From: Octopus sinensis
Taxonomy: Eukaryota
Reading direction: 5' to 3'
Assembly: GCF_006345805.1 (NCBI RefSeq)
Contig: NW_021826228.1
Location: 1 to 36,197 of the forward strand
Length of the DNA: 36,197 nt
In this document: piece after piece, positions 1,024 to 36,197 of the stretch
Layout of the letters: each line of letters opens with the position of its first letter
Numbering within the stretch: position 1 is the stretch's first letter
Program-made: the position numbers and the translations under genes
The notes under the pieces: generated by a model
The model's database searches: none
Seen by the model: the letters and a program-made list of their open reading frames with translations, nothing else
What the model was told of the DNA's origin: nothing

Positions 1024-1090
1024 CTGTTTGGAATTGGAAGAAATTTAGAAACACAACAAATCTGGAGATTTTAGTCAATTCTGAACTTAC

Positions 1091-1242
1091 CACTCCACAG
1101 CATGATCAAGAGCTGTTTTGCCATCTCCACCCTTCATATCCAAATCAGCTCCAGCCTCGATTAAGAAATTTATAAGATCTGTTTTGCCCACTTGGCAAGC
1201 TGCCATCAGATATGTCACACCTTGTGAACTTATTTCGTTAAT
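1091..1242 (-). CDS. Internal exon of an ankyrin-repeat protein gene
   Basis: 152-bp exon with a pyrimidine-rich acceptor (cttcacttcag|) and GTAAGT donor. It encodes INEISSQGVTYLMAACQVGKTDLINFLIEAGADLDMKGGDGKTALDHAVE, matching the ankyrin consensus (G.T.L..A...G......LI..GAD.....DG.TAL..A). Confidence 0.8.
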
Positions 1243-1380
1243 CTGAAGTGAAGAAAGGGAAGGCATGTAAAATATATTAAAGAGAGAAGAAGAGAGAGTA
1301 CGGAAGAAGATGCTTGGGTGAGGATATAGGGATATGAAAGAGAAAGAAAGATGAAGAAGACAGATTGATATATATATAAT

Positions 1381-8369: not shown

Positions 8370-8622
<253 letters not shown>

Positions 8623-11600
8623 TATATAGAGGGCATTATACATACATGCCAGGAGGCATTCTACATACACGCCATACGCTAAGAGGGACAATCAGTCATT
8701 TCTACCAAAAATATTACTAATCCCACCGAATGCAATTTTTCAAAGAAAGACATTTAAAAATATATAGACCTGTATCACAGTGATTTCATACTTACGTAAT
8801 CATCAGCAGGCCTGAATATACCATAAATAAACAACGACCCCGCTTCGCTTAAGCCGATCAGCTAACTGATCAACATCAACGAAGCACATGCACATATTTT
8901 TTTTATATACTATATCCGGATGAATGGCAAACTTTTACGAATTGCATTTCGGGAGAGGAAAAGTTTTTTCGGAATAAAAATTTAGCAATTAAGGACAACT
9001 ACTACTAATAAGGAAAACTTAACAAGAAATGTCAGGTAGATAGCGTAAAAACCTCATAAGAGAAAAATTTCGAAAATAATTATTTCTTATTGAACATATT
9101 AATTTATATATATATAGAGGGCATTATACATATATGCCAGGAGGCATTCTACATACACGCCATACGCTAAGAGGGACAATCAGTCATTTCTACCAAAAAT
9201 ATTACTAATCCCACCGAATGCAATTTTTCAAAGAAAGACATTTAAAAATATATAGACCTGTATCACAGTGATTTCATACTTACGTAATCATCAGCAGGCC
9301 TGAATATACCATAAATAAACAACGACCCCGCTTCGCTTAAGCCGATCAGCTAACTGATCAACATCAACGAAGCACATGGTTGAATTTATATATACTATAT
9401 CCGGATGAATGGCAAACTTTTACGAATTGCATTTCGGGAGAGGAAAAGTTTTTTCGGAATAAAAATTTAGCAATTAAGGACAACTACTTAATAAGGAAAA
9501 CTTAACAAGAAATTGTCAGGTAGATAGCGTAAAAACCTCATAAGAGAAAAAATTTCGAAAATAATTATTTCTTATTGAACATATTATTTATATTATATAG
9601 AGGGCATTATACATACATGCCAGGAGGCATTCTACATACACGCCATACGCTAAGAGGGACAATCAGTCATTTCTACCAATATTACTAATCCCACCGAATG
9701 CAATTTTTCAAAGAAAGACATTTAAAAATATATAGACCTGTATCACAGTGATTTCATACTTACGTAATCATCAGCAGGCCTGAATATACCATAAATAAAC
9801 AACGACCCCGCTTCGCTTAAGCCGATCAGCTAACTGATCAACATCAACGAAGCACATGGTTGAATTTATATATATACTATATCCGGATGAATGGCAAACT
9901 TTTACGAATTGCATTTCGGGAGAGGAAAAGTTTTTTCGGAATAAAAATTTAGCAATTAAGGACAACTACTTAATAAGGAAAACTTAACAAGAAATTGTCA
10001 GGTAGATAGCGTAAAAACCTCATAAGAGAAAAAATTTCGAAAATAATTATTTCTTATTGAACATATTAATTTATATATAGAGAGGGCATTATACATACAT
10101 GCCAGGAGGCATTCTACATACACGCCATACGCTAAGAGGGACAATCAGTCATTTCTACCAAAAATATTACTAATCCCACCGAATGCAATTTTTCAAAGAA
10201 AGACATTTAAAAATATATAGACCTGTATCACAGTGATTTCATACTTACGTAATCATCAGCAGGCCTGAATATACCATAAATAAACACGACCCCCCCGCTT
10301 CGCTTAAGCCGATCAGCTAACTGATCAACATCAACGAAGCACATGGTTGAATTTTATATACTATATCCGGATGAATGGCAAACTTTTACGAATTGCATTT
10401 CGGGAGAGGAAAAGTTTTTTCGGAATAAAAATTTAGCAATTAAGGACAACTACTTAATAAGGAAAACTTAACAAGAAATTGTCAGGTAGATAGCGTAAAA
10501 ACCTCATAAGAGAAAAAATTTCGAAAATAATTATTTCTTATTGAACATATTAATTTATATATATATAGAGGGCATTATACATACATGCCAGGAGGCATTC
10601 TACATACACGCCATACGCTAAGAGGGACAATCAGTCATTTCTACCAAAAATATTACTAATCCCACCGAATGCAATTTTTCAAAGAAAGACATTTAAAAAT
10701 ATATAGACCTGTATCACAGTGATTTCATACTTACGTAATCATCAGCAGGCCTGAATATACCATAAATAAACAACGACCCCGCTTCGCTTAAGCCGATCAG
10801 CTAACTGATCAACATCAACGAAGCACATGGTTGAATTTATATATACTATATCCGGATGAATGGCAAACTTTTACGAATTGCATTTCGGGAGAGGAAAGTT
10901 TTTTCGGAATAAAAATTTAGCAATTAAGGACAACTACTTAATAAGGAAAACTTAACAAGAAATTGTCAGGTAGATAGCGTAAAAACCTCATAAGAGAAAA
11001 AATTTCGAAAATAATTATTTCTTATTGAACATATTAATTTATATATATAGAGGGCATTATACATACATGCCAGGAGGCATTCTACATACACGCCATACGC
11101 TAAGAGGGACAATCAGTCATTTCTACCAAAATATTACTAATCCCACCGAATGCAATTTTTCAAAGAAAGACATTTAAAAATATATAGACCTGTATCACAG
11201 TGATTTCATACTTACGTAATCATCAGCAGGCCTGAATATACCATAAATAAACAACGACCCCGCTTCGCTTAAGCCGATCAGCTAACTGATCAACATCAAC
11301 GAAGCACATGGTTGAATTTATATATACTATATCGGATGAATGGCAAACTTTTACGAATTGCATTTCGGGAGAGGAAAAGTTTTTTCGGAATAAAATTTAG
11401 CAATTAAGGACAACTACTTAATAAGGAAAACTTAACAAGAAATTGTCAGGTAGATAGCGTAAAAACCTCATAAGAGAAAAATTTCGAAAATAATTATTTC
11501 TTATTGAACATATTAATTTATATATATAGAGGGCATTATACATACATGCCAGGAGGCATTCTACATACACGCCATACGCTAAGAGGGACAATCAGTCATT

Positions 11601-14034
11601 TCTACCAAAATATTACTAATCCCACCGAATGCAATTTTTCAAAGAAAGACATTTAAAAATATATAGACCTGTATCACAGTGATTTCATACTTACGTAATC
11701 ATCAGCAGGCCTGAATATACCATAAATAAACAACGACCCCGCTTCGCTTAAGCCGATCAGCTAACTGATCAATCAACGAAGCACATGGTTGAATTTATAT
11801 ATACTATATCCGGATGAATGGCAAACTTTTACGAATTGCATTTCGGGAGAGGAAAAGTTTTTTCGGAATAAAATTTAGCAATTAAGGACAACTACTTAAT
11901 AAGAAAACTTAACAAGAAATTGTCAGGTAGATAGCGTAAAAACCTCATAAGAGAAAAAATTTCGAAAATAATTATTTCTTATTGAACATATTAATTTATA
12001 TATATAGAGGGCATTATACATACATGCCAGGAGGCATTCTACATACACGCCATACGCTAAGAGGACAATCAGTCATTTCTACCAAAATATTACTAATCCC
12101 ACCGAATGCAATTTTTCAAAGAAAGACATTTAAAAATATATAGACCTGTATCACAGTGATTTCATACTTACGTAATCATCAGCAGGCCTGAATATACCAT
12201 AAATAAACAACGACCCCGCTTCGCTTAAGCCGATCAGCTAACTGATCAACATCAACGAAGCACATGGTTGAATTTATATATACTATATCTCCGGATGAAT
12301 GGCAAACTTTTACGAATTGCATTTCGGGAGAGGAAAAGTTTTTTCGGAATAAAAATTTAGCAATTAAGGACAACTACTTAATAAGGAAAACTTAACAAGA
12401 AATTGTCAGGTAGATAGCGTAAAAACCTCATAAGAGAAAAAATTTCGAAAATAATTATTTCTTATTGAACATATTAATTTATATATATATAGAGGCATTA
12501 TACATACATGCCAGGAGGCATTCTACATACACGCCATACGCTAAGAGGGACAATCAGTCATTTCTACCAAAAATATACTAATCCCACCGAATGCAATTTT
12601 TCAAAGAAAGACATTTAAAAATATATAGACCTGTATCACAGTGATTTCATACTTACGTAATCATCAGCAGGCCTGAATATACCATAAATAAACAACGACC
12701 CCGCTTCGCTTAAGCCGATCAGCTAACTGATCAACATCAACGAAGCACATGGTTGATTTATATATACTATATCCGGATGAATGGCAAACTTTTACGAATT
12801 GCATTTCGGGAGAGGAAAAGTTTTTTCGGAATAAAAATTTAGCAATTAAGGACAACTACTTAATAAGGAAAACTTAACAAGAATTGTCAGGTAGATAGCG
12901 TAAAAACCTCATAAGAGAAAAATTTCGAAAATAATTATTTCTTATTGAACATATTATTTATATATATAGAGGGCATTATACATACATGCCAGGAGGCATT
13001 CTACATACACACGCCATACGCTAAGAGGGACAATCAGTCATTTCTACCAAAAATATTACTAATCCCACCGAATGCAATTTTTCAAAGAAAGACATTTAAA
13101 AATATATAGACCTGTATCACAGTGATTTCATACTTACGTAATCATCAGCAGGCCTGAATATACCATAAATAAACAACGACCCCGCTTCGCTTAAGCCGAT
13201 CAGCTAACTGATCAACATCAACGAAGCACATGGTTGAATTTATATATACTATATCCGGATGAATGGCAAACTTTTACGAATTGCATTTCGGGAGAGGAAA
13301 AGTTTTTTCGGAATAAAAATTTAGCAATTAAGGACAACTACTTAATAAGGAAAACTTAACAAGAAATTGTCAGGTAGATAGCGTAAAAACCTCATAAGAG
13401 AAAAAATTTCGAAAATAATTATTTCTTATTGAACATATTAATTTATATATATATAGAGGGCATTATACATACATGCCAGGAGGCATTCTACATACACGCC
13501 ATACGCTAAGAGGGACAATCAGTCATTTCTACCAAAAATATTACTAATCCCACCGAATGCAATTTTTCAAAGAAAGACATTTAAAAATATATAGACCTGT
13601 ATCACAGTGATTTCATACTTACGTAATCATCAGCAGGCCTGAATATACCATAAATAAACAACGACCCCGCTTCGCTTAAGCCGATCAGCTAACTGATCAA
13701 CATCAACGAAGCACATGGTTGAATTTATATATACTATATCCGGATGAATGGCAAACTTTTACGAATTGCATTTCGGGAGAGGAAAAGTTTTTTCGGAATA
13801 AAAATTTAGCAATTAAGGACAACTACTTAATAAGGAAAACTTAACAAGAAATTGTCAGGTAGATAGCGTAAAAACCTCATAAGAGAAAAAATTTCGAAAA
13901 TAATTATTTCTTATTGAACATATTAATTTATATATATATAGAGGGCATTATACATACATGCCAGGAGGCATTCTACATACACGCCATACGCTAAGAGGGA
14001 CAATCAGTCATTTCTACCAAAAATATTACTAATC
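8623..14034 (-). mobile_element. Hammerhead-bearing tandem array (putative non-LTR retrozyme), 11.2 units of ~483 bp; ribozyme-sense strand is minus
   Basis: Unit starts (gagggcatt) at about 8629, 9117, 9600, 10082, 10568, 11050, 11529, 12007, 12492, 12969, 13456, 13941. Units are near-identical (mostly homopolymer indels), with one hammerhead per full unit and no conserved ORF of note. Confidence 0.85.
8760..8822 (-). ncRNA. Type I hammerhead ribozyme, first of 11 minus-strand copies
   Basis: GGUAUAU-UC-AGGCCUG-CUGAUGA-U-UAC GUAA GUA-U-GAAA-UCAC U GUGA-UA/CAGGUCU-AUAUA. Other copies at about 9248-9310, 9728-9790, 10213-10275, 10699-10761, 11180-11242, 11659-11721, 12136-12198, 12621-12683, 13102-13164, 13587-13649. 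Predicted cleavage between 8773 and 8772. Confidence 0.85.
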
Positions 14035-14047
14035 TTACTAATATTAC

Positions 14048-15535
14048 TAAGTTTTCCTTATTAAGTAGTTGTCCTTAATTGCTAAATTTTTATTCCGAAA
14101 AAACTTTTCCTCTCCCGAAATGCAATTCGTAAAAGTTTGCCATTCATCCGGATATAGTATATATAAATTCAACCATGTGCTTCGTTGATGTTGATCAGTT
14201 GGCTGATCGGCTTAAGCGAAGCGGGGTCGTTGTTTATTTATGGTATATTCAGGCCTGCTGATGATTACGTAAGTATGAAATCACTGTGATACAGGTCTAT
14301 ATATTTTTAAATGTCTTTCTTTGAAAAATTGCATTCGGTGGGATTAGTAATATTTTTGGTAGAAATGACTGATTGTCCCTCTTAGCGTATGGCGTGTATG
14401 TAGAATGCCTCCTGGCATGTATGTATAATGCCCTCTCTATATATAAATTAATATGTTCAATAAGAAATAATTATTTTCGAAATTTTTTCTCTTATGAGGT
14501 TTTTACGCTATCTACCTGACAATTTCTTGTTAAGTTTTCCTTATTAAGTAGTTGTCCTTAATTGCTAAATTTTTATTCCGAAAAAACTTTTCCTCTCCCG
14601 AAATGCAATTCGTAAAAGTTTGCCATTCATCCGGATATAGTATATATAAATTCAACATGTGCTTCGTTGATGTTGATCAGTTAGCTGATCGGCTTAAGCG
14701 AAGCGGGGTCGTTGTTTATTTATGGTATATTCAGGCCTGCTGATGATTACGTAAGTATGAAATCACTGTGATACAGGTCTATATATTTTTAAATGTCTTT
14801 CTTTGAAAAATTGCATTCGGTGGGATTAGTAATATTTTTGGTAGAAATGACTGATTGTCCCTCTTAGCGTATGGCGTGTATGTAGAATGCCTCCTGGCAT
14901 GTATGTATATGCCCTCTATATATATATAAATTAATATGTTCAATAAGAAATATTATTTTCGAAATTTTTTCTCTTATGAGGTTTTTACGCTATCTACCTG
15001 ACAATTTCTTGTTAAGTTTTCCTTATTAAGTAGTTGTCCTTAATTGCTAAATTTTTATTCCGAAAAAACTTTTCCTCTCCCGAAATGCAATTCGTAAAAG
15101 TTTGCCATTCATCCGGATATAGTATATATAAATTCAACCATGTGCTTCGTTGATGTTGATCAGTTAGCTGATCGGCTTAAGCGAAGCGGGGTCGTTGTTT
15201 ATTTATGGTATATTCAGGCCTGCTGATGATTACGTAAGTATGAAATCACTGTGATACAGGTCTATATATTTTTAAATGTCTTTCTTTGAAAAATTGCATT
15301 CGGTGGGATTAGTAATATTTTTGGTAGAAATGACTGATTGTCCCTCTTAGCGTATGGCGTGTATGTAGAATGCCTCCTGGCATGTATGTATAATGCCCTC
15401 TATATATATAAATTAATATGTTCAATAAGAAATAATTATTTTCGAAATTTTTTCTCTTATGAGGTTTTTACTATCTACCTGACAATTTCTTGTTAAGTTT
15501 TCCTTATTAAGTAGTTGTCCTTAATTGCTAAATTT
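14048..15535 (+). mobile_element. Inverted part of the same array, 3.1 units; ribozyme-sense strand is plus
   Basis: Reverse complement of the 483-bp unit, starting at taagttttcc and ending at gctaaattt. Confidence 0.9.
14242..14304 (+). ncRNA. Type I hammerhead ribozyme, first of 3 plus-strand copies (others 14724-14786, 15207-15269)
   Basis: CTGATGA 14258-14264, GAAA 14277-14280, stem III ATCAC-T-GTGAT, cleavage after A14291 (AUA triplet), stem I AGGCCTG/CAGGTCT. Confidence 0.85.
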
Positions 15536-15550
15536 ATATTTGTATATATA
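15535..15550 (+). repeat. Right copy of the 16-bp direct repeat (putative TSD)
   Basis: TATATTTGTATATATA, identical to 8607-8622. Confidence 0.75.
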
Positions 15551-15703
15551 ATACATTACGGAGAGGTACTTGCATACAAGTGACTTGATCTGAGATCGTA
15601 TGCTGGAACGAAAACTTGTAGTGCATCTAACGGTTTTGTGTGTTTCGTAAATGGCTTATAAACACTTTCCACGCTGCAATTCTTATATATAATATACATA
15701 TAT

Positions 15704-15737
<34 letters not shown>

Positions 15738-16971
15738 AACCTAATTAACACCCAAATGTTAGTCATTTCTTTTATGATCCAAAACTAGGTCAAAAGTACT
15801 GAATGGATCTTTATGAAATTTGGAAATTATATTCTATGCATAAGGGCCATAACCCCCATGACAATTCATATATTTTTGCTGTTGATGAAATTTTAACCAT
15901 AGATATTAGACACAAATGAAGTAATATTTATAACAATTCATCTTCTTATAAGTTAGAAAGACCCCTCCATGGAGACTTAACACCCACAATTTTGTCATCT
16001 TATCTAAGCACAGACGAATACAGTTGTACTCTTGGAAGCTGTGGGGTCATCCGAGCATAGAAGAAGAGCATTATTTGTAATTCAATGGTACACCAGTGTA
16101 ACAGTTTGCTTTGACATACACTTACATTGGGATTTCTGCAATGTGGTGCATAAATTGTCAAATAAATGAGAGGCATCTTTGCCTCCACTGATTCAGTTGC
16201 AAAGTGTTGAGTAAAGTTATTTGATTGCAGACCTCCTTTCAGTCTTTTTACCATCACTGGGTCACACATAGTAACAATGATTTAAAGGGCTTTCCAGATG
16301 AGTGACTGGTTATTAAAAGACATTTATGGTTCGTAATCTTATTCTGTCCAGTTACGTATCAGTATAGAGGTCATTTTCAAACTCCAGAGGTGACACTTTC
16401 ATTTCTCCTAGCCCACACGTCACACATTTGTTAATGTGTTATTTCAGTTGAGTCACGCCCTTCTAATTGCTATAGATTCGTAATGTGCCTGTCACCTGGA
16501 TGGTGAGGAATCCTACATTGGGAGTGGTAACGACTAGTGTAGGGTAGCTGACTGCTTATTGTTATCATTCATCTTTTGGTTTCCTGTAGCTTTGCTCTCT
16601 TTTACAATCCAGCGAACATATATTTCCTATTTCAAAGAAATTCAAACAATAGATATAAGACCCAAATTAAAAAAAATTCTCAACAATTCAAATTCTCTGG
16701 TCGACATTAAAATACTCACACCCAACAGGGGCCTTAAATCTCACACTAAAGTGCTCCATGACCGTCTATTTTAAGGTGCAAGATCCTTTTAACAGGTACA
16801 ATATGACTGGAATTTTGGAATATGCCTATAAAAATCAGTATTATGGGATACATGTGGCACGATTACAATTTTGTTTGGGAGCGTAAAGAGGGACATAACC
16901 TTCATCTGCAATTTTGATGAAATTCGAAAGATAGATATTCCAGTTCATTACAGAAATTATAACAGAAAAGT

Positions 16972-18120
16972 TTAGCCAATAAAAACACACGCACTATATA
17001 TTTGGTGTTATTTTGCTTCAGTGATATTTATTTTTTACATTAATCTTAATCTTATTTCGGCCAGAGTTCTTTCGTCACACTCCTGTGACCGCATCAGTGG
17101 TCCTTTGTTTTCTTCTTTCGTATTTGTGTCTCTCCTTACTATTTGTGTCTCTCCGTCAGCTATTTTGTATTTCTATTGTATGTCTTCATTTGAGCATGCT
17201 TATATTTCTATGTGCCTCTATGTTTATTTAGTGTGTGTGTGGGGGGATGCCTGTAATATTTGTATCTTCTGTTTATATACATTCATGTAATTTGTATTTT
17301 GTTTTTGTTGTTGTTGCTTTTGTTCTAATTTTGTTCATGTGTTTACATCCACCCATTATTATCATTACATATGCTTGTATGTATGTATAACAACAATATT
17401 AGTAATAATAATAATAAATCTAATCGAAAAAAAAATATATATATACATACATATACATACATAGATATATATACATATATATATAGTTATTCATATATAT
17501 ATATATACATATACATACATAGATATATATACATATATATAGTTATTCATTTCTATTTGTTTATTTATCTGTGTATTTATTTATTATGTTTTCGGGATCC
17601 TCTATCGTCATATGTTGTGGTGTGTGCTATTGATCCATTCTAGTTTTCTATTCAGGCTAGGTTTATTTTCTATTATATGTGTAGCTTCTGTAATTTGTCT
17701 AATTGTTGCATCTGTTCTATGTGTGGACAATATCTTAATCTCTATGTTATTGATTGATCCCCCTTTTCCTGTTCGGCGTGTCGGTACAGAATCGACGAGC
17801 TTTTACCTTCCTTCAGTTGTCTACAATGTCATTCACCCGCTCTCCTATGCTTCTTGCGTTCCCCTACGTATGTTATTGTCTTGTGTACTACTGCATCGTC
17901 CCTCTATACATCTTATACTATAGACTACATTTCTGGCTATACAGTTTGTTTGTGGGCTAAATCTACATACAGTGCAATAGTTATCCGTACAGAGGGTTCT
18001 ACTAAAAGGATAGGTTCTACCAATTATAGATTTGATAGGGTTGCCTGGCTTTTCAACAACCTTAATTCTTAGTTTAAGTTTATCTAGGGTTCTTCTAAAG
18101 CGGTACGCCAGTTCACCTCC
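16972..18120 (-). mobile_element. Penelope-like element: GIY-YIG endonuclease region plus 3' UTR/pLTR (frameshifted copy)
   Basis: Reverse complement of 33440-34578; small deletions near 17760 and 17850 break the frame; degenerate hammerhead at 17059-17103. Confidence 0.85.
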
Positions 18121-18124
18121 ACTG

Positions 18125-18609
18125 AACTCTGGCTAGAAATTGTGAAAAATAAAACCCAAATCCTTCATTCATACTATGCAAAACCTATGGCCTCAAAATA
18201 CCTGATCCACCGGAACTCAGCCATTGCGGGCAATGCCAAATTCAATATTTTGATGGAAGACCTCGTCAGAATAATGAGAAATGTGTCACGCATGTGCGAG
18301 CCTACAGAATTAAAGAGACACATACAGTATTTCATTCACCGCATGCAGTTCTCAGGTTACAGCCATAAAGAAAGTATCAGAGTATACAAAGGAGTCTTGA
18401 AGAAATTTGATAATATATTATGTAATGATAGGAATGGGATTTGCCCACCCTATAGGACAAGTCATGGAACACTATAGAAAGGACAAAAAAGAAAATAGGG
18501 AAGGCCAACTCTTGGTATGATAGCCATAAATACCAGAGTGTCATGTTCGTTGACACCACCCCTGGAGGTGAACTGGCGTACCGCTTTAGAAGGACCCTAG
18601 ATAAACTTA
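18125..18609 (+). mobile_element. Inverted 5' segment of the same PLE (RT C-terminal/thumb region)
   Basis: YYAKPMASKYLIHRNSAIAGNAKFNILMEDLVRIMRNVS...MQFSGYS...YQSVMFVDTTPGGELAYRFRRTLDKL. It shares a 46-bp inverted overlap (18564-18609 vs 18075-18120) with the EN segment. Confidence 0.8.
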
Positions 18610-19709
18610 TAGAAGTTTCTTGCCCCGAATGCCACGAAATGGGACTGAACCTGGAAACTCGCAGTTGGAAAGGAAAGCTCTTACCCCACAGTCGTGCAAA
18701 TAGTGATAATGATAATGATGATTATTGCTTACTGATTTGCGCAGTTATTTTGTTTTTTCTTTAGAAAAGTGTCTTTGTGTTAATGTTCAGTCAAACGTAA
18801 TAACAACAACTAGAACATTCTTTGTAATAAAGGCAAAATATTGCACACACCCATTCATTTCTTTGAAATCGTTTGGTAAATAGACAACGATTTATGCATT
18901 ACACACGCGCTCGCGCAGACACACAAACACACAAACAAACACATATCTTCCTGGTTGGTTATTGTTACAGAGGAGATGGTGTCATTGCAGAGACTAAATG
19001 TATGAGAGAAAAATATGAAGGATATTTTAGGAAAGAGAGAAAATTGGGATTAAAAAAGGCTGACAGAGGGATTGGAGAGTGAAAGGTGTGCGGAGAAGCA
19101 GAGTAAATTCAATATATTTCAGGTGTTTCGTGTTATTTCAATCAATTTGACCATCTCGCAGATAACTGTGGATTTAAATTTCCTAAAACGAAATGGTGGT
19201 GGTGGTGGGAAAGAGCATTGGTGGTGTATCGTCTGCTGTTTCTTGCAATTCACGTAGCCATTATTTGCCGCAATGCTTTACACAGGCAAAGCAGTCCTAT
19301 AAAACACTGCCCTGCCGAGTTTCATTATTCATAACTCTAAAGAAATTGGGTTTTTAAAATAAACTTTTTTTTTATGAATATACTCCTAATATTGTACGTT
19401 CCAACTATATCGGATTTTCTTGTGAAAACTCATTTTTTGCTCCCGTCAAAGCCGAATCGTTTCATTCCCCCAAATTTCAGCCGAATTTCGAAACATGCTT
19501 TTCAAAACAATTTCAAATACAATCGGACTGCAAACCTTCTGACACATTTTTGAATAAAATTTCATTCAAAAATATTCTTTTTTCTAAAGGTTAGGGAACA
19601 AATTCTTTGCGGTACAGTTGTGTGGATATGGTGGTAGGTGATAATTATATAAACATATATAGGAACATGCAGTAAGACTGATATTTCTACATTTACATAT
19701 ATATACATT

Positions 19710-19780
<71 letters not shown>

Positions 19781-19879
19781 ATATACATACATTCTTTCCT
19801 ATATTGTTAAAAATATAACTCATAGATGTATTATTTTATAACATATTACAGTTTTATATACATTTGTACATACATACAT

Positions 19880-20220
19880 GGAGACATGCGTGGTATCTTG
19901 AGTAAGTGTCTTCTACTATAAAATTAGGCAGACGAATGCTTTGGGAGTGTAATTGATAGACGGAAACTGAAAGAAGCCCCGTCGTATATGTTTATCCATG
20001 TGTGTCTTTTTGTCTGCGATTCTCACCCATTACCGCTTGATAACGAGTGTTTCTGTGTTTACGTTTCGGTGACTTAGTAGTTTGAGGAAAAGAGACTGAT
20101 AGACTGACTACTAGGCTTTACGAAAAGACTATTCCTTGAGTCGATTTACTCAACTACATAGCCTGATGGCAGTGCCCCATCATGGCCGCAGTCAAATGAC
20201 TGAAACGAATTAAAGAATAT
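19880..20220 (+). mobile_element. Degraded SINE (paralog at ~28955-29290, -)
   Basis: agtgtcttctactata...cggaaactgaaagaagccc...catggccgcagtcaaatgactgaa, same family as 5950-6329. Confidence 0.7.
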
Positions 20221-21749
20221 ATATACTAGTACCAATACAACAACCAACCAATACAGCAAACACCACAACCACAGAGACATCTCCCCTACAACTATCATGA
20301 CCACCACCACCAATACTAACAATACTCCTTTTCTAGAATGCGCGGAGGGATGGACCCTTTGCATATACAAAAGAGCACATCCCAACTGTTTTCATTCTAT
20401 AGAAAAGCACCCCCTAGTGTCACGAATGAATTCTTCTTCTCATAGGTATCTTCTTGTTTTTCCATGCATCGAATTCATTGGACAGTCGATAGCATTGTGC
20501 TTTAGGACTATGGTCTTATCTGATGATAGCCTCTAAAAGAATATCTGTCCAAATAAACTGGCGAAAATAATCCCAAGCACACAAACCAAGTTTCTCTGAG
20601 GCCAAATCTGCAATTTTTAACGCTAAGTCAAAATCCCGATTCTCCGTTGACGGCCACACGCATTTTGCAATTGTCCACGAATTCATCTTATCCACAACAC
20701 ATTTTCACATTGTAATAATTAATGCCAATTAAAGTCTAATTTAAAAAGAAAATTAAATGAATTATTATAATGAATTCCACCGTTGCTAGAAATAGCAGCC
20801 AAATCTACACTGAAATGACAACATATTGCCTTCCAAATCTCCATCTATATTTATATATGAGCCGATGAAATTTCAATTGTAATAGATAGAGCTGTTAGAA
20901 CTAGCAGCCAAATAACTCCTGTTCTTCTGAAGTTCACTGCAGTTTATAAACAAATAAACAACAACAGGTTCATTTAACCGCGCCATTTCATACGCTAGAA
21001 ACGGCAGCAAAACTTTATCAAATATATATGCGAGGATGGAAGCAAAGAAGCCAGAATTTTGCTGTAAGCCCCTTATATAAACACTCAAAATTATCTTATT
21101 TTCTGGACTTTTCGGAAGCGTTTTGAGAATTTGTGTTCATGCAATTATTCAACTCCCCACAGCCAAAAGGTGTTTCTCGTGTGTTTCAAAGGTCCTTCGT
21201 ATATCTCACACATTTGCCAGCATCGAATTGCATGTTGATTCCTTCTGACCATTTTTATGTGGCGTCTATGTCTTTCTGTTGAAGATTCGCTTAAGAGGGT
21301 TCTTTAACTCCATTTGTGTTGTTGGCGTTCCTGATTGGTGTGGATGTCTCACACAAACACACACACACATACACATACACGCATAACCTCACACACACAT
21401 ACACGCCCAACCCTCACACACACGTGCAAAATACACACACGTACACACACAGACACACATATGCATGTATTCCTATATATATCCAGACACATGAACTCAT
21501 GCATGGGACACTGCAATATATAACACACTTCCGGAAAACCAATCTACAGAAATTACGCTTCTCAGGAACAGAAAGGAGAAAGCTAATTCGAAGGCTCACA
21601 CACAATCCGTCACAGGAACTGTAAAAATATGTAAAGTTTTCAAGAAGTTCATTGTTTATATATATGCGGATATCTAGACATGCAACTATATGCATGAGAT
21701 TACATACATACAGAAAAACATCCAAATCTAGAGCAAAATATGAGACACA

Positions 21750-21923
21750 TCCCAGTGATTTTTTTTATGTTGATAATCCTAGTAGGTATCCTTTCACATT
21801 TTTCTTGTGACACCAGGAAGTTATGGGGATGTAAATAAATGAACGGCAGTTGTGAAGCAGTGATGAGGGAGAAACACAGAGACAAAGACACACACATACA
21901 CTTACATGTATACATACATATAT

Positions 21924-21985
<62 letters not shown>

Positions 21986-22149
21986 GATTGATCTGTTTCA
22001 GTTTCTATCTACAGAATCCATTGGCAAGGTTATAGTTGATCTGAAGCTATAGCAGAATATACATGCCAAGTCACTACACAGTGGGACTGAACCCAGGACT
22101 ATGTATTTTGGAACCAAATTTGTTACCACACAGCCACACCTTCACCTAT
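21750..22149 (-). mobile_element. Degraded SINE (paralog at ~27361-27710, +)
   Basis: gctatagcagaa...cagtgggactgaacccagg...cacacagccacac, same family as 5950-6329. Confidence 0.7.
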
Positions 22150-22464
22150 GTATATGTCTGTGTGTATGTGTGTATATGTGTATGCTTGTATATATGTATG
22201 CATGTATATATGTATATATGTGTAGATATTACAGGTACATCTATATATATATATATGCATCCACGCATATTTATATAATTTATATCTACAAATATATAAA
22301 CATATACACATATGCCTGTATACATATACATCTATATCTATAGAAATACATCTATACATATACAGGCATACATATATAGCTATATATTTACATATATACT
22401 TATACATCAATCTATTTATCTATCTATCTATCTATCTGTCTGTCTATCTATCTATATATCTATA

Positions 22465-22531
<67 letters not shown>

Positions 22532-22676
22532 ATATGTATATATATATACATATATATATATATAAATACATGTATATATATATACTAGGATATATAAAAA
22601 TATAGTTATGTACATCTGTATGTATTTGTATATACATTTCTGCAGATGTATACATACATACATACATATATATTAG

Positions 22677-23532
22677 TCTCCTGAAGGAATGTAGATACCA
22701 ACTTGCAGTCCCTCTGACGAACCTCTGGAAAAATTCGTTAGACGCAGGTTATATACCGAAACAGTTTCTATGCCAGTCAGTCATCCCGGTTCTCAAACAG
22801 TGAAACAGATCCCTCGTAGTCAACTATCGCCCAATCTCACTCACCTCACACAATATTAAAGTATTTGAAAGAGTGTGAAGATTAAGGATAGCTGACTTCC
22901 TGGAGATCCACAAACTTTGAAATGCAAATCAGCATGGCTTTCGCTGTGGCAGGGACTGTCTAACACAGCTCTTACACCACATTGAAGATATACTCAAAGC
23001 CTTGGGAACAGGTTCGATTTCTGATGTCATATATCTTCACTTCCGTAAAGCGTTCGACAGAGTAGACCATAATATCCTACTCTCAAAATTGGCAAATGTT
23101 GGATTCCGTGGAAAAGTTCTACACTGGATTAAGTATTTCCTTGCGTGTAGAACACAACATGTTGTAGTTGATGGAGTCCACTCAAGCCCAGCAAAATTCA
23201 CCAGCGGTGTCCCCCAGGGGACTATCTTGGGCCCGCTACTCTTTATAATTTATATAAACGACATTTCCAGTGTCGTACGTTACTGCAAAGTGAAAATATT
23301 TGCTGATGACACTAAGCTCCAGCAAATCGTCAATGAAGAAGCAGTCCAAACTCAACTGCAGTCTGATCTATATGCTGTGAGTCAATGGGCAGACAGAAAC
23401 AAAATGCAACTGAACGAGGGAAAATTTGAGCTGATGCATTTTGGAAGAAATTCCTCACTAAAACAGCTATACTCTCTTCCTTCAGGGGAACCGCTCACAG
23501 CCTCTAACAATATCAGAAACATGGGTGTAATT
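22677..23532 (+). mobile_element. CR1/L2-group LINE A, 5' part (RT domain), 5'-truncated, with stops
   Basis: NYRPISLTS, NQHGFR, YLHFRKAFDRVDH, SGVPQGTILGPLLFIIYIND, IFADDTKL motifs. Confidence 0.92.
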
Positions 23533-25118
23533 AGTTAGTTAGTTAGTTAGTTAATTTGGCTCAAAAGCAAATAGCAAGGCCATGTAGGGGAACATGGAGT
23601 TAAGTACAGGGTGGTGTTCATGTAAAGAGTGCAGGCCACTTGAGGTCCAGGGAGGCTTTGAACAAAGCGGTCGTCGGCATCTTCACCATCTCGTCTGACA
23701 GCTTGTTCCACGGATCCGCAAACCGGACGGAGAAAGCTCCTCTCCTTCGATTGAGATGAAATCGTCGCAGGTAGAGCTTTTCGGAATGACCCCGCAGCCG
23801 ACGCTCTGGAGCAGGAGTGAAGAACAGCTCTTTCGAGAGGTTACACTTTCTGCTTATGATGTTGTGGGCGAGAATGAGATCACCAAGGCGGCGGCGTTTT
23901 TCAAGAGAATAAAAGTCGAGCGTCCTCAGCCTTTCTACGTAGGACAACTTTTTGAGACCATGAACCATGCGGGTAGCCAGCTTCTGGACTCTTTCGAGAT
24001 GCTGTATGTCTTTGGGGAGATAAGGAGAAGAGGCTTGAATCCCATACTCCAATATGGGTCTCACCAGCGTGACATAGAGTGGTAGGAATATGGCTGCTGT
24101 GAGCATTCCGAATGACCGTCGAATCAAGAACAGAATTCCGCGTGCTTTGTTGGCAGCATGGACGCACTGGGCTGAAGGCGAAAAGGGGGAATCCACCAAC
24201 ATACCCAGGTCCTTTACCTGATGGGTCCTCTCCAGCAGCAGTTGCAGAAGTAGAGCCGACAGGCAGATGACAGCACTTTGACACGTTCAGACACAGGTCC
24301 CAATAGTTAGACCACTTCCAAATTTGGTGGAGGCATCGACGAAGATCCTTTATATTACCGCGAGGAGCGACCAGTTTGATATCGTCGGCAAATAGAAGGG
24401 TGTGTTGCGTGAGGTCGTCGGGCAAGTCATTTATGAAGACTAAGAACAACAAGGGCCCAAGCACTGAACCTTGAGGCATGCCACTGCTCGCACTGGAGAC
24501 GTCGGACCGCGAACCATTAACTTGGACTTGGAAGGAGCGATCTGAGAGGAAGGCACCAACCCATCGTACAATATCCGGATGGAAACTATATGCTTGAAGC
24601 TTGACAAGTAATAGGCGGTGGTTTACCGAGTCAAAAGCTTTGGCAAAGTCCAATAAAAAGAATTTCAACAGCATCACTATCATCGAGGATGCGCGTCACC
24701 AATTCTTCCATTACTAGTAAGTTGGTCAAGCATGATCTCTTCGGCACGAAGCCGTGTTGGGAATCAGAGATAGAGGCTGTGTTTAGGAGGTGGAGCATCA
24801 TACTTTTCTTAGTTAAGCGGGTCTTCGCGGCTCCCTTTCTTGAAAATTGGGCAGATTATCGCTGTTCTCCAGTCTGCAGGTATAACACCCGTCGCCAATG
24901 ACATATTGAATAGTCGTGTTAAGGGCTCGCACATGACCGGAGCCAACGCTTTGATAACCCGTGGGTGTATGCCGTCAGGGCCGTGACCCTTGTTGACATC
25001 GAGGCCTTGAATAACACGTTTGACTTCGTCACGCGTGATGACCAATCGAAGCATTGGAGGTACCGATCTAACAAAGGGAGGGGGTTCACGACCATCATCT
25101 TGTTTGAAAATAGTTTAA
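23533..25118 (-). mobile_element. CR1/L2-group LINE B inserted into LINE A; 5'-truncated, (TAAC)n tail
   Basis: KGHGPDGI, DFAKAFDSVNH, GMPQGSVLGPLLFLVFINDL, FADDIKL, RPILEYG motifs; (TTAG)n at 23533-23552 is its 3' tail; AATT repeated at both junctions. Confidence 0.92.
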
Positions 25119-25122
25119 AATT

Positions 25123-25865
25123 GTTGATGACGATCTCAGTTGGAGTGCACACATCAACAAGAAGGTCGATATAGCTCGTAGGATGAGTTCCTGGGTCTTA
25201 AGAAGTTTCCCGTCCAGAGAACAAGGTGTCATCACACCACTTTTCTCCTCATTTGTACGGCCACACCTCGAATACTGCTGCCCACTGTGGTCTCCCCATA
25301 CAAGACAAAACATATCGAGGATTGAATTACCCCAGAGGGCACTCACTAAACGAATTGAAGGCATGGCTGCTCCCGATTATTGGGATCGCCTAAAAGCCTT
25401 GAAACTCTACTCACTCCAGCGTCGCCGTGAGCGGTACATCATTTGTACGATGTGGAAAATATACCGCCAACTTTGCCCAAATGACCTGAAAATTAGCTTC
25501 AAGATTCATCCAAGACTTGCACCACGGGCCATACATCTCCTGCCCAATTCAAAACCACAGCATACATGTACACTGCAACATAATTTCTTTTATTCAAGAG
25601 GCCCTGCCATATTTAACATTGTCCCGAAAGAGATTAAAGAGGAAAAGGATCCCATCAATTTTAAACGGAGTCTGGATAGATTCCTTCAAGGAATACCAGA
25701 TAAGCCACCCATAATTGGACAACAACTCACCCAACAGAAACTCACTACGTGAATGGACAATAAACAAAACTTGACTTAAACAGGATTCAGATAATCCTAC
25801 CAGGTGGTGCTATTAAGTTAGTCATGGCCTGGACCAATCTTTGGTCGAAATATATCTAAGTTTTA
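25123..25865 (+). mobile_element. LINE A, 3' part and 3' UTR
   Basis: VDDDLSWSAHINKKVDIARRMSSWVLRSF...VRPHLEYCCPLWSP...YSLQRRRERY, in the same frame as 23002-23532; 3' stem-loop GACCA-ATCTT-TGGTC and ATCTAAGTT tail repeat. Confidence 0.92.
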
Positions 25866-29397: not shown

Positions 29398-29705
29398 CAG
29401 CGTGATCACCGCGACCAGCCAGGCTTTCAGATGATGCTACACATCGCCGGTCACAATTCGCTTCGCACTGCGTTAGCCTTCAAATGTCGCTTCCACGCTG
29501 GCTATACAATAAGGCTGACGTAAGGAAGAGTGAGAGAAGTTGTGGCGAAAGTGTACAGCCCAGATCAACACCACCACTCTCCTTGTCGGTGTCTCGTGGA
29601 GCTTTAGGTGTTTTCGTTTAATAAACACTCAAAATGCCCGTATGGGAATCAAAACCGTGATCGTACGACCGAGAATCCCCTGCTCTAAACACTGGATCAT
29701 TGCAC

Positions 29706-29708
<3 letters not shown>
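29398..29708 (-). mobile_element. Second tRNA-derived SINE family (head-only copy at 31634-31762)
   Basis: Head gaggcgcaatggcccagtggttagggcggcggatcgcggtttcgattcccagac in the 31634-31762 copy shows an A box (TGGCCCAGTGG) and B box (GGTTTCGATTCC). Confidence 0.8.
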
Positions 29709-29739
<31 letters not shown>

Positions 29740-32640: not shown

Positions 32641-32949
32641 CTGCGCGAGCGCGTGTGGAATGCATGAATCGTTGTCTATTAACCAAACGATTTCAAAGAA
32701 ATGAATGGGTGTGTGCAATATTTTGCCTTTGTTACAAAGAATGTTCTAGTTGTTGTTATTACAGTTGTCTGAACATTAACACAAAGACACTTTTCTAAAG
32801 AAAAAACAAAATAACTGCGCAAATCAGTAAACAATAATCATCATTATCATTATCACTATTTGCACGACTGTGGGGTAAGAGCTTTCCTTTCCAACTGCGA
32901 GTTTCCAGGTTCAGTCCCATTTCGTGGCATTCAGGGCAAGAAACTTCTA

Positions 32950-34929: not shown

Positions 34930-35903
34930 ATGTGAGTTCTCTAGACATCCTAGTGGTTGAGGCTATACTCATGAAGTAATGTAGATAATTAAGTAACATA
35001 AACAGATTTCCAAAGTTCATTAAAGTTCTTTAAAGATGATGTAGAGTCTTATCACAGAATTTTAAAAAGGTTTTAATAGCATCACAGAGAAGGTGACTTA
35101 ATCCATAGTGTACGTATCCCAATGTAGGATTCCTCACCATCCAGGTGACAAGCACATTACGAATCTATAGCAATTAGAAGGGCGTGACTCAACTGAAATA
35201 ACACATTAACAAATGTGTGACGTGTGGGCTAGGAGAAATGAAAGTGTCACCTCTGGAGTTTGTAAATGACCTCTATACTGATACGTAACTGGACAGAATA
35301 AGTTTACGAACCATAAATGTCTTTTAATAACCAGTCACTCATCTGGAAAGCCCTTTAAATCATTGTTACTATGTGTGACCCAGTGATGGTAAAATGACTG
35401 AAAGGAGATCTGCAATCAAATAACATTACTCAACACTTTGCAACTGAATCAGTGGAGGTAAAAATGCCTCTCATTTATTTGACAATTTATGCACCACATT
35501 GCAGAAATCACAATGTAAGTGTATGTCAAAGCAAACTGTTACACTGGTGTACCATTGAATTACAAATAATGCTCATCTTCTATGCTCGGATGACCCCACA
35601 GCTTCCAAGAGTACAACTGTATTCGTCTTTGCTTAGATAAGATGACAAAATTATGGGTGTTAAGTCTCCATGGAGGGGTCTTTCTAACTTATAAGAAGAT
35701 GAATTGTTATAAATATTACTTCATTTGTGTCTAATATGTATGGTTAAAATTTCATCAACAGCAAAAATATATGAATTGTCATGGGGGTTATGGCCCTTAT
35801 GCATAGAATATAATTTCCAAATTTCATAAAGATCCATTCAGTACTTTTGACCTAGTTTTGGATCATAAGAGATATGACTAAAATTTGGGTGTTAATTAGT
35901 GTT

Positions 35904-35939
<36 letters not shown>

Positions 35940-36076
35940 ATATATATAAAGAATTGCAGCGTGGAAAGTGTTTATAAGCCATTTACGAAACACACAAAAC
36001 CGTTAGATTCACTACAAGTTTTCGTTCCAGCACACGATCTCAGATCAAGTCACTTGTATGCAAGTACCTCATCGTA

Positions 36077-36187
<111 letters not shown>

Positions 36188-36197
36188 GATAGATAGA

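What the first reader, a model, noticed from the sequence alone, without database searches (positions are those of the whole stretch)
8623..15535. Cephalopod-type retrozyme: 14 identical type I hammerhead ribozymes in a 483-bp tandem array
Seen: the apparent satellite has one complete hammerhead per unit, with core CUGAUGA, GAAA, AUA cleavage triplet, 7-bp stem I (AGGCCUG/CAGGUCU) extended by UAUAU/AUAUA across a UC bulge, and a GUAA-capped stem II. The core is invariant in all 14 copies and the unit has no meaningful ORF. Known: tandem non-coding units with a type I hammerhead define non-LTR retrozymes (newt satellite 2, Schistosoma Sm-alpha, and coral, mussel and axolotl retrozymes), which self-process multimeric transcripts into monomers that circularise. 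Inference: this family yields a ~483-nt circular RNA, on the long side for such elements. I cannot tell whether it has already been reported.
Basis: partly seen in the sequence, partly recalled or inferred. Interest (0 to 1): 0.95.

Follow-up and report, generated by a model that had tools for sequence, protein, structure and literature searches.

The report
Hammerhead-ribozyme repeat inserted into a microsatellite
A 6.9-kb block of fourteen near-identical 483-bp non-coding units, each with a complete hammerhead self-cleaving RNA motif, is a recent mobile-element insertion of the known "non-LTR retrozyme" kind, and its layout shows how it probably got in.

Summary
There are 14 exact copies of a 48-nt hammerhead motif, one per ~483-bp unit, with no ORF over 54 codons and 33% GC.

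Corrections:
- The array is not one head-to-tail run. 11.2 units lie on the − strand (14034→8619) and 3.1 units on the + strand (14048→15535), joined 5′-to-5′ through a 13-nt filler.
- No Rfam hammerhead model matches, even at E≤10 on 111 nt. The 10.1–11.1 pair is U·U and helix II has only 3 bp.
- The host ("cephalopod") could not be verified.

New evidence:
- A 95–96% identical inverted paralogue at the window's right end is an empty site: the array's left flank runs straight into its right flank.
- The insert (8623–15534, 6912 bp) sits in a (TA)n tract between two copies of a 16-nt duplication.
- Both blocks have their 3′ ends outward and 5′ ends inward, as expected from reverse transcription primed from both nicked target strands on a circular or multimeric RNA.

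Verdict: a new member of a known kind (metazoan non-LTR retrozyme). Ribozyme activity and the ~483-nt circular RNA are inferred, not shown. The unusually complete insertion footprint gives it moderate interest.

The parts
8607..8622 (+). Left copy of the 16-nt target-site duplication TATATTTGTATATATA. Its last 4 nt overlap the first unit-derived bases (microhomology).
   Evidence: The exact 15/16-mer occurs only here and at 15535-15550 in the whole window. The empty-site paralogue has pure (TA)n at this place.
8619..14034 (-). Block A: 11.2 units of the 483-nt repeat, hammerhead-sense on the - strand. Sense 5' end at 14034 (unit position 51), sense 3' end at 8619 (unit position 154).
8766..8813 (-). 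Hammerhead 1 of block A (48-nt helix I-core-II-III motif). Cleavage between 8773 and 8772 on the - strand.
9254..13640 (-). Ten further identical hammerheads of block A at 9254-9301, 9734-9781, 10219-10266, 10705-10752, 11186-11233, 11665-11712, 12142-12189, 12627-12674, 13108-13155 and 13593-13640. The nucleotide 5' of each cleavage site is at 9261, 9741, 10226, 10712, 11193, 11672, 12149, 12634, 13115 and 13600.
14035..14047 (.). 13-nt filler TTACTAATATTAC at the 5'-to-5' junction of the two blocks. It is part of a local 9-nt slippage repeat (AATATTACT x3.2, 14022-14050).
14048..15535 (+). Block B: 3.1 units, hammerhead-sense on the + strand. Sense 5' end at 14048 (unit position 240), sense 3' end at 15535 (unit position 281).
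14251..14298 (+). Hammerhead, block B copy 1. Helix I 5' strand 14251-14257, CUGAUGA 14258-14264, helix II with GUAA loop 14265-14276, GAAA 14277-14280, helix III 14280-14290, A17 at 14291, helix I 3' strand 14292-14298. Cleavage after 14291.
14733..14780 (+). Hammerhead, block B copy 2. Cleavage after 14773.
15216..15263 (+). Hammerhead, block B copy 3. Cleavage after 15256.
15535..15550 (+). Right copy of the 16-nt target-site duplication TATATTTGTATATATA.
8374..8606 (.). Target context: microsatellites (TATC)n, (TC)n and (TA)n immediately left of the insertion.
35900..36197 (-). Empty-site paralogue. Read on the - strand: (TCTA)n-(TC)n-(TA)n running directly into ACATTACGATGAGGTACTTGC..., that is, the left flank joined to the right flank with no 483-bp units. 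It is part of an inverted segmental duplication (15529-16523 = 36105-35117 at 96.3%; 16969-19738 = 34578-31795 at 95.3%).

Best explanation
This is a recent, complete insertion of a non-autonomous, non-coding retroelement of the metazoan non-LTR retrozyme kind.

Shown:
- A 6912-bp insert (8623-15534) consists only of 483-bp units.
- It lies in a (TA)n microsatellite between two copies of a 16-nt target-site duplication, and it is absent from a 95-96% identical paralogue in the same window.
- Each unit carries one type I hammerhead motif with 13 of the 15 conserved positions canonical (U.U at 10.1-11.1), three helices and an AUA|C cleavage site.

Inferred:
- Transcripts of hammerhead polarity cut themselves once per unit after A17. 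Host ligase closes the 483-nt monomers into self-paired circular RNA.
- A reverse transcriptase supplied in trans (Penelope-like or LINE-type) copied such a circular or multimeric RNA round and round at a staggered break in the (TA)n target.
- One cDNA was primed from each nicked strand ('twin priming'), giving 11.2 units one way and 3.1 units the other. Their 3' ends sit at the flanks and their 5' ends are joined in the middle through a 13-nt slippage filler.
For: - Array, 14 exact motifs and their strands.
- Motif beyond chance: a descriptor hits only the 14 copies, against 1 hit in 43.4 Mb of shuffles.
- Class features met: 483-bp unit, 33% GC, no ORF over 54 codons, and a circular monomer far more self-paired than shuffles (-120.3 vs -91.5 +/- 5.6 kcal/mol, z -5.2).
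- Hammerhead fold accessible: it is only 2 kcal/mol above the MFE, both in the 73-nt piece and in the full circle. Helix I forms with p 0.9-0.99.
- Precedent for U.U at the base of helix II: axolotl HHR_Amex2, which cleaves 22% in 1 h as a monomer and much better in dimeric constructs (PMC7229834).
- Insertion: empty-site paralogue and a 16-mer found only at the two edges. Both copies share two substitutions relative to the paralogue's pure (TA)n.
- Geometry: sense 3' ends at 8619 and 15535, 5' ends at 14034 and 14048 at different unit phases (51 vs 240).
- Units of the two blocks are indistinguishable: p2 differs from m1 at 2 columns and p1 from m8 at 3.
- Literature: metazoan retrozyme TSDs are larger than 4 bp, and multimers are thought to arise by reverse transcription of a circle (PMC7229834, PMC7761336). 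PLE insertions are partial tandems, often with an inverted 5'-truncated copy at the 5' end, and favour microsatellites (PMC8557442). Retrozymes have been proposed as PLE derivatives (10.64898/2026.07.22.740005).
Against: - No Rfam hammerhead model matches at any threshold tried.
- Helix II is weak: 3 A/U-rich bp plus a U.U mismatch.
- In the nearest-neighbour ensemble of the full circle, helix III forms with p ~0.01-0.02. A rival pairing of core U4-U7 with A15.1-A15.4 has p ~0.17.
- The self-complementarity is not strand-specific: the antisense circle also has z -4.1.
- No related copy from another locus or species could be obtained, so there is no covariation or cross-species conservation.
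- Invariance of the core within the array is weak evidence (P ~0.02-0.04).
- No Penelope-like element is in the window; the only reverse-transcriptase fragments are LINE-type.
- There are no RNA data.
Confidence: 0.68

Rival explanations
1. A mobile or dispersed minisatellite whose hammerhead-like motif is a chance or decayed resemblance and does not cleave. On this reading the units spread and amplify at the DNA level, for example by unequal crossing-over or reintegration of extrachromosomal circles.
For: - Rfam hammerhead models do not match.
- U.U at 10.1-11.1 and a 3-bp helix II.
- Helix III is rarely formed in the predicted ensemble.
- No comparative support was obtainable.
- The descriptor does occur by chance at about 1 per 43 Mb, so a Gb-sized genome would hold tens of chance hits.
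Against: - The chance of such a motif in one given 483-bp unit is about 2e-5.
- Every other class feature of non-LTR retrozymes is met.
- The same U.U variant is active in axolotl.
- A 16-nt TSD with 3'-ends-out geometry points to target-primed reverse transcription rather than DNA-level amplification.
Confidence: 0.17
2. The units are the terminal (pseudo-LTR) repeats of an autonomous Penelope-like element, or a remnant of one, and not an independent retrozyme family.
For: The tandem-plus-inverted architecture and the microsatellite target are described as typical of PLE insertions (PMC8557442). Vertebrate retrozymes are homologous to PLE pLTRs.
Against: - The whole 6912-bp insert consists of 483-bp units with no ORF over 54 codons.
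- No GIY-YIG domain or PLE reverse transcriptase is in the window.
- PLE hammerheads are described as minimal variants lacking helix III (PMC7761336), whereas this one has a 4-bp helix III.
Confidence: 0.08
3. This rival concerns the layout only. The head-to-head arrangement arose after insertion by a DNA inversion with one breakpoint at the array edge, or it is an assembly artefact, and not by twin priming.
For: Inverted tandem repeats are hard to assemble (noted for PLEs in PMC8557442). An inversion with one breakpoint exactly at the right edge of the array would give the same picture.
Against: - The junction is asymmetric: unit phases 51 vs 240, a 204-nt spacer between the complementary arms and a 13-nt slippage filler. 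A fold-back chimera would not look like this.
- The outer end of the short block abuts an exact copy of the TSD. For an inversion or a misjoin this would need a coincidence.
Confidence: 0.2

Closest known systems
Metazoan non-LTR retrozymes (coral Acropora, mussel Mytilus, axolotl; Cervera & de la Pena 2020, PMC7229834)
   Same: - Non-coding tandem units of a few hundred bp with low GC.
- One type I hammerhead per unit.
- A predicted highly self-paired circular monomer.
- A TSD larger than 4 bp, and multimeric copies.
   Different: - The unit (483 bp) is longer than the ~170-400 nt quoted for invertebrates.
- The unit sequence has no detectable relative in the collections I could search.
- The array is two opposed blocks; I did not find an inverted arrangement mentioned in those papers (0 occurrences of 'inverted' in PMC7229834).
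- No RNA or cleavage data exist here.
Axolotl HHR_Amex2 hammerhead (PMC7229834)
   Same: A type I hammerhead in a retrozyme repeat with a U.U mismatch at the base of helix II and a real helix III.
   Different: Helix III here is 4 bp with a 3-nt loop, against 2 bp with a tetraloop. The sequences are unrelated as far as can be judged. The axolotl motif has measured activity and this one has none.
Penelope-like element insertions (Craig et al. 2021, PMC8557442)
   Same: Partial tandem copies with an inverted 5'-truncated copy abutting the 5' end, insertion into microsatellites, and a hammerhead in the repeated part.
   Different: No reverse transcriptase or GIY-YIG ORF is present. No 30-40-bp 'tail' was seen. 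PLE hammerheads are minimal and lack helix III.
L1 'twin priming' inversions
   Same: Two cDNAs primed from the two nicked target strands, with 3' ends at the flanks, 5' ends joined internally by microhomology or filler, and the whole flanked by a TSD of about 15 bp.
   Different: Here both arms are multi-unit copies of one short sequence, which needs a circular or multimeric template. There is no poly(A) tail.
Newt satellite 2 and Schistosoma Sm-alpha hammerhead repeats
   Same: Tandem genomic repeats that encode type I hammerheads.
   Different: Those motifs are matched by Rfam's Hammerhead_1 family (from my own knowledge). This motif is not.

Membership tests
Hammerhead ribozyme, type I | Conserved catalytic core: C3 U4 G5 A6 N7 G8 A9, G12 A13 A14, A15.1-U16.1 and H17 (not G) | tested here: met
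   CUGAUGA, GAA, A15.1-U16.1 and A17 are present in all 14 copies.
Hammerhead ribozyme, type I | G10.1-C11.1 pair closing helix II (part of the 15 highly conserved nucleotides) | tested here: not met
   U.U at 10.1-11.1. The same deviation is reported in the active axolotl HHR_Amex2 (PMC7229834), so it weakens the case but does not exclude membership.
Hammerhead ribozyme, type I | Three helices around the core, with helix I open-ended and helices II and III capped by loops | tested here: met
   Helix I is 7 bp, helix II is 3 bp with a GUAA loop, and helix III is 4 bp with a CUG loop. The hammerhead fold is 2 kcal/mol above the MFE.
Hammerhead ribozyme, type I | Match to the Rfam covariance model (Hammerhead_1 or other hammerhead families) at the gathering score | tested here: not met
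   No hammerhead hit at gathering score, at E<=10 on 7.4 kb, or at E<=10 on 111 nt.
Hammerhead ribozyme, type I | Tertiary contacts between an internal loop of helix I and loop 2 | tested here: inconclusive
   A UC bulge follows 7 bp of helix I and loop 2 is GUAA. The helix I extension beyond the bulge is not favoured in the full-length ensemble. Tertiary pairs cannot be predicted with these tools, and mussel retrozyme hammerheads also lack the archetypal contacts.
Hammerhead ribozyme, type I | Site-specific self-cleavage | not testable with these tools
   Needs in vitro transcription.
Metazoan non-LTR retrozyme | Short non-coding tandem repeats (150-450 bp in PMC7229834; 51-972 bp in 10.64898/2026.07.22.740005), from dimers to large multimers | tested here: met
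   483-bp unit, 14.3 units, no ORF over 54 codons.
Metazoan non-LTR retrozyme | Low GC (<45-50%) | tested here: met
   33% GC.
Metazoan non-LTR retrozyme | One type I hammerhead per unit | tested here: met
   14 motifs, one per unit. See the hammerhead rows above for the caveats.
Metazoan non-LTR retrozyme | Mobile element: an insertion with a TSD larger than 4 bp | tested here: met
   16-nt TSD and an empty-site paralogue.
Metazoan non-LTR retrozyme | Monomer predicted to fold as a highly self-paired circle | tested here: met
   Circular MFE -120.3 kcal/mol, z -5.2, 63% of bases paired. The antisense circle also has z -4.1, so this is not strand-specific.
Metazoan non-LTR retrozyme | Expressed as unit-length linear and circular RNA | not testable with these tools
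   No RNA data are accessible.
Metazoan non-LTR retrozyme | Co-occurrence with Penelope-like elements in the same genome | not testable with these tools
   Only 36 kb of the genome is available. It contains LINE-type RVT_1 fragments and no PLE.

The most novel reading that the evidence does not exclude
This locus is an intact record of one retrozyme integration event. Reverse transcription was primed from both strands of a staggered break in a (TA)n tract, and each cDNA ran several times round a circular 483-nt RNA. If other insertions of the family confirm this, it would be direct structural evidence for how non-LTR retrozymes integrate (rolling-circle, target-primed, twin-primed). It would also tie their footprint to the tandem/inverted footprint of Penelope-like elements in an invertebrate, a link so far argued from co-distribution and pLTR homology in vertebrates. 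A further, more speculative corollary is that read-through transcription of the ~1.5-kb inverted arms would give hairpin double-stranded RNA that could feed small-RNA silencing of the family.
Probability: 0.4. Interest if true: 0.6.

Novelty: new member of a known kind. Interest (0 to 1): 0.45.

Why it matters
Non-LTR retrozymes are known, but reviews still describe their integration step and their helper enzyme as unresolved (PMC7761336; 10.64898/2026.07.22.740005). This locus offers filled and empty sites side by side, an exact TSD, a microsatellite target and a 3′-ends-out double block. That makes the integration model concrete and testable genome-wide. It also shows that a hammerhead with a complete core can be invisible to Rfam-based annotation, so counts such as "235 Hammerhead_1" in a squid genome (PMC6962438) may miss whole families.

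Tried and rejected
no hammerhead hit at gathering score on the window, at E≤10 on 8400–15800, or at E≤10 on 14215–14325. Only noise appeared (microRNA-like hits in TA tracts, snoZ7 at 14 bits).
- **Other copies through protein-indexed assemblies:** exact look-ups of two unit ORFs found nothing on record. A homology search with the longest stop-free stretch (54 aa) found no candidate at all. I ran no further search on another frame. The neighbouring RT fragment finds nothing closer than ~56% identity, so the host genome and its near relatives are evidently not in that collection.
- **DNA pattern scans** of metagenome, viral and prokaryotic genome collections with three different 22–24-base-specific patterns: no match.
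- **Other copies in the window:** only TA-rich low-complexity matches.
- **Host identification:** the nearest RT relatives come from one unnamed fragmented NCBI assembly, GCA_052426985.1. There are no tRNA genes. The host remains unresolved.
- **Strand-specific RNA structure as evidence for a functional sense RNA:** rejected, because the antisense circle is also far more stable than its shuffles.
- **Core invariance as evidence of selection:** kept only as weak support, since many variants are indels in homopolymer or TA runs.
- **Block-specific variants to date an inversion:** none found; most variants are private.
- **Literature:** no paper in the library reports a cephalopod retrozyme.
Full report
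**1. What is there**

Tandem Repeats Finder reports two adjoining arrays: 8617–14034 (period 485, 11.2 copies, 98% matches) and 14048–15540 (period 482, 3.1 copies, 98%). AT skew changes sign at about 14000.

The 48-nt string AGGCCTGCTGATGATTACGTAAGTATGAAATCACTGTGATACAGGTCT occurs exactly 14 times. Eleven copies are reverse-complemented on the + strand (hammerhead-sense on the − strand, starts 8766 to 13593). Three are on the + strand (14251, 14733, 15216). The array is nevertheless not a single head-to-tail run.

Cutting at the putative cleavage site gives 12 complete units of 477–488 nt and a 483-nt consensus. GC is 33%. The longest stop-free stretch in any of the six frames of the circular consensus is 54 codons (ORF list).

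**2. The motif**

On the sense strand the motif reads as follows:
- Helix I 5′ strand: AGGCCUG
- Core: C3UGAUGA9
- Helix II: U10.1, then UAC, GUAA loop, GUA, then U11.1
- G12AA14
- Helix III: A15.1UCA, CUG loop, UGAU16.1
- A17, then the cleavage site
- Helix I 3′ strand: CAGGUCU

Of the 15 conserved positions (PMC6155905), 13 are canonical. The 10.1–11.1 pair, normally G–C, is U·U, which leaves helix II with three Watson–Crick pairs.

[quoted passage not shown] That motif cleaves 22% in one hour as a monomer and much better in dimeric constructs (PMC7229834).

A descriptor requiring the core, helix I ≥6 bp, helix II ≥3 bp (base mismatch allowed) and helix III ≥4 bp hits only the 14 array copies in the window. 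It hit once in 43.4 Mb of dinucleotide-shuffled sequence. That is about 2×10⁻⁵ for one given 483-bp unit. In a Gb-sized genome such a motif alone would not be decisive; its position, one per unit of a non-coding repeat, is what counts.

**3.

No hammerhead family (type I, II, III, HH9 or HH10) is reported at the gathering score on the window, at E≤10 on 7.4 kb, or at E≤10 on a 111-nt piece. I attribute this to the U·U, the short A/U-rich helix II and the helix III format, but I could not test that attribution. This element would escape Rfam-based annotation.

**4. Folding**

- The 73-nt motif alone has an MFE of −13.7 kcal/mol, not better than shuffles (z −0.98).
- That MFE uses helices I and II but pairs core U4–U7 with A15.1–A15.4.
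- The hammerhead fold is −11.7 kcal/mol, 2 kcal/mol higher.
- In the full circular monomer the MFE is −120.3 kcal/mol against −91.5 ± 5.6 for shuffles (z −5.2, 63% paired). This fits the "highly self-paired" circles described for retrozymes (PMC7229834, PMC7761336).
- The antisense circle is also far more stable than its own shuffles (z −4.1). This is a property of the DNA sequence and not evidence for one RNA polarity.
- In the ensemble of the circle, helix I forms with p 0.9–0.99, helix II about 0.25, helix III 0.01–0.02 and the rival pairing about 0.17. Enforcing the hammerhead costs 2 kcal/mol.

The catalytic fold is therefore accessible but not dominant. This is compatible with cleavage during transcription followed by a stable, non-cleaving circle. 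That last step is inference.

**5. Variation**

Units are 98–99.5% alike. There are 47 variable alignment columns (about 25 events), mostly private indels in homopolymer or TA runs. A 119-nt stretch enclosing the hammerhead is identical in all 14 copies. Under a uniform model P(no event in the 73 hammerhead columns) ≈ 0.019 and P(a gap ≥118) ≈ 0.039. This is weak support only. Units of the two blocks are not distinguishable (p2 vs m1: 2 differing columns; p1 vs m8: 3), so both blocks come from the same recent source.

**6. Geometry**

In unit coordinates, with 1 as the first base after the cleavage site:
- Block A runs on the − strand from its sense 5′ end at 14034 (unit position 51) to its sense 3′ end at 8619 (position 154).
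- Block B runs on the + strand from its 5′ end at 14048 (position 240) to its 3′ end at 15535 (position 281).
- Between them lie 13 nt, TTACTAATATTAC, part of a local 9-nt slippage repeat (14022–14050).

The blocks are therefore joined 5′-to-5′ with their 3′ ends outward. They form a near-perfect inverted repeat of about 1.5 kb with a 204-nt spacer.

**7. It is an insertion, and the empty site is in the same window**

A self-comparison shows a large inverted segmental duplication:
- 15529–16523 = 36105–35117 (96.3%)
- 16969–19738 = 34578–31795 (95.3%)
- 19764–20370 = 29397–28792 (91%)
- 20658–22596 = 28792–26897 (86%)

Read on the − strand, 36197→35900 is (TCTA)n–(TC)n–(TA)n followed directly by ACATTACGATGAGGTACTTGCATACAAGTGACTTG…. 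This aligns with the array's left flank (8480–8622) joined to its right flank (15551 onward), with no 483-bp unit between them.

At the filled site, the 16-mer TATATTTGTATATATA stands at both edges (8607–8622 and 15535–15550, same orientation). The 15/16-mer occurs nowhere else in the window. The paralogue has plain (TA)n there, so the two copies share two substitutions that the paralogue lacks. In a TA-rich context this is the strongest argument that they duplicate one another, that is, a target-site duplication.

The insert is 8623–15534, 6912 bp. The duplication arms differ by 4–5% and the units by ≤2%, so the insertion is probably younger than the duplication (inference).

**8. Mechanism**

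A 16-nt TSD indicates a staggered break repaired by fill-in, as in target-primed reverse transcription. Both blocks have the sense 3′ end abutting a TSD copy. The left one has 4 nt of TA microhomology to the unit's UAUAUAUA tract. The 5′ ends meet internally at unrelated unit phases through a slippage filler.

This is the layout produced when both nicked target strands prime cDNA synthesis ("twin priming", from my own knowledge of L1). [quoted passage not shown]

cDNAs of 11.2 and 3.1 units need a circular or multimeric template. That is what the retrozyme model proposes (PMC7761336).

The helper enzyme cannot be named. The window holds only LINE-type RVT_1 fragments 8 kb away and no Penelope-like element. 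The Penelope link is supported by published work on vertebrates (10.64898/2026.07.22.740005). That work did not use insertion architecture as evidence.

A post-insertion inversion with one breakpoint exactly at the array edge, or a misassembly, could mimic the layout. The asymmetry of the junction and the TSD at the outer end of the short block argue against both.

**9. Comparison with what is known**

All the sequence-level features given for metazoan non-LTR retrozymes are met:
- short non-coding tandem units
- low GC
- a type I hammerhead per unit
- a TSD larger than 4 bp
- a self-paired circle (PMC7229834)

The unit is longer than the ~170–400 nt quoted for invertebrates but inside the 51–972 bp reported in 2026. 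[quoted passage not shown]

The hammerhead has a real helix III, like invertebrate retrozyme motifs and unlike the minimal Penelope motifs.

Expression, cleavage, circularity and co-occurrence with Penelope-like elements could not be tested.

I found no report of this family, nor of retrozymes in cephalopods, in the library. There is only an Rfam count of 235 Hammerhead_1 loci in the giant squid (PMC6962438; searches). The library does not hold most subscription-journal papers.

The "cephalopod" origin is unverified.

**10. Verdict**

The feature is real and is a new member of a known kind. Confidence that it is a retrozyme-type element inserted by reverse transcription, with a hammerhead that is or recently was active, is about 0.68. 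The insertion itself is near certain; ribozyme activity and the circular RNA are the inferred parts. Interest is moderate. It rests mainly on the unusually complete insertion footprint, which makes the integration mechanism of these elements testable.

Noticed in passing
window 15529-22596 vs 36105-26897 (also 8480-8622 vs 36197-36106): A large inverted segmental duplication, 86-96% identical and more diverged towards the centre. Its arms face each other across a 22.6-26.9 kb centre. One arm carries the retrozyme insertion and the other does not.
   Followed up: partly
window 23002-25752: Nested or opposed LINE-type reverse-transcriptase fragments (Pfam RVT_1, E 6e-20 and 2e-22) in the GC-richest part of the window (41-50% GC). 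They sit at the centre of the inverted duplication. The best database relatives are only ~50-60% identical, and the two looked up both come from assembly GCA_052426985.1.
   Followed up: partly
window 1087-1250, - strand: An ORF end with a clear ankyrin-repeat match (Ank_5 E 3e-07, Ank_2 E 1.6e-06), probably an exon of a host gene. The array may therefore be intronic or near a gene.
   Followed up: no
window 29566-30626 vs 31635-32652; 30178-30456 vs 32209-32487: A direct repeat of about 1 kb at 87.6% identity. Each copy carries a similar 92-aa ORF (MESERCAEKQGKFNEI...) with no Pfam match, possibly an unclassified transposable element.
   Followed up: no
window 8866-8900 (unit m10, leftmost full unit): The unit nearest the 3' end of block A is the most divergent, differing from the others at 14-24 columns. 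It has a local replacement (GCACATATTTTTTTTATATA for GGTTGAATTTATATATA) of unexplained origin.
   Followed up: no
window 14255-14294: The hammerhead core region gives a weak snoZ7 C/D-box snoRNA match in Rfam (14.3 bits, E 2.8), because UGAUGA resembles a C box. It is almost certainly noise.
   Followed up: no
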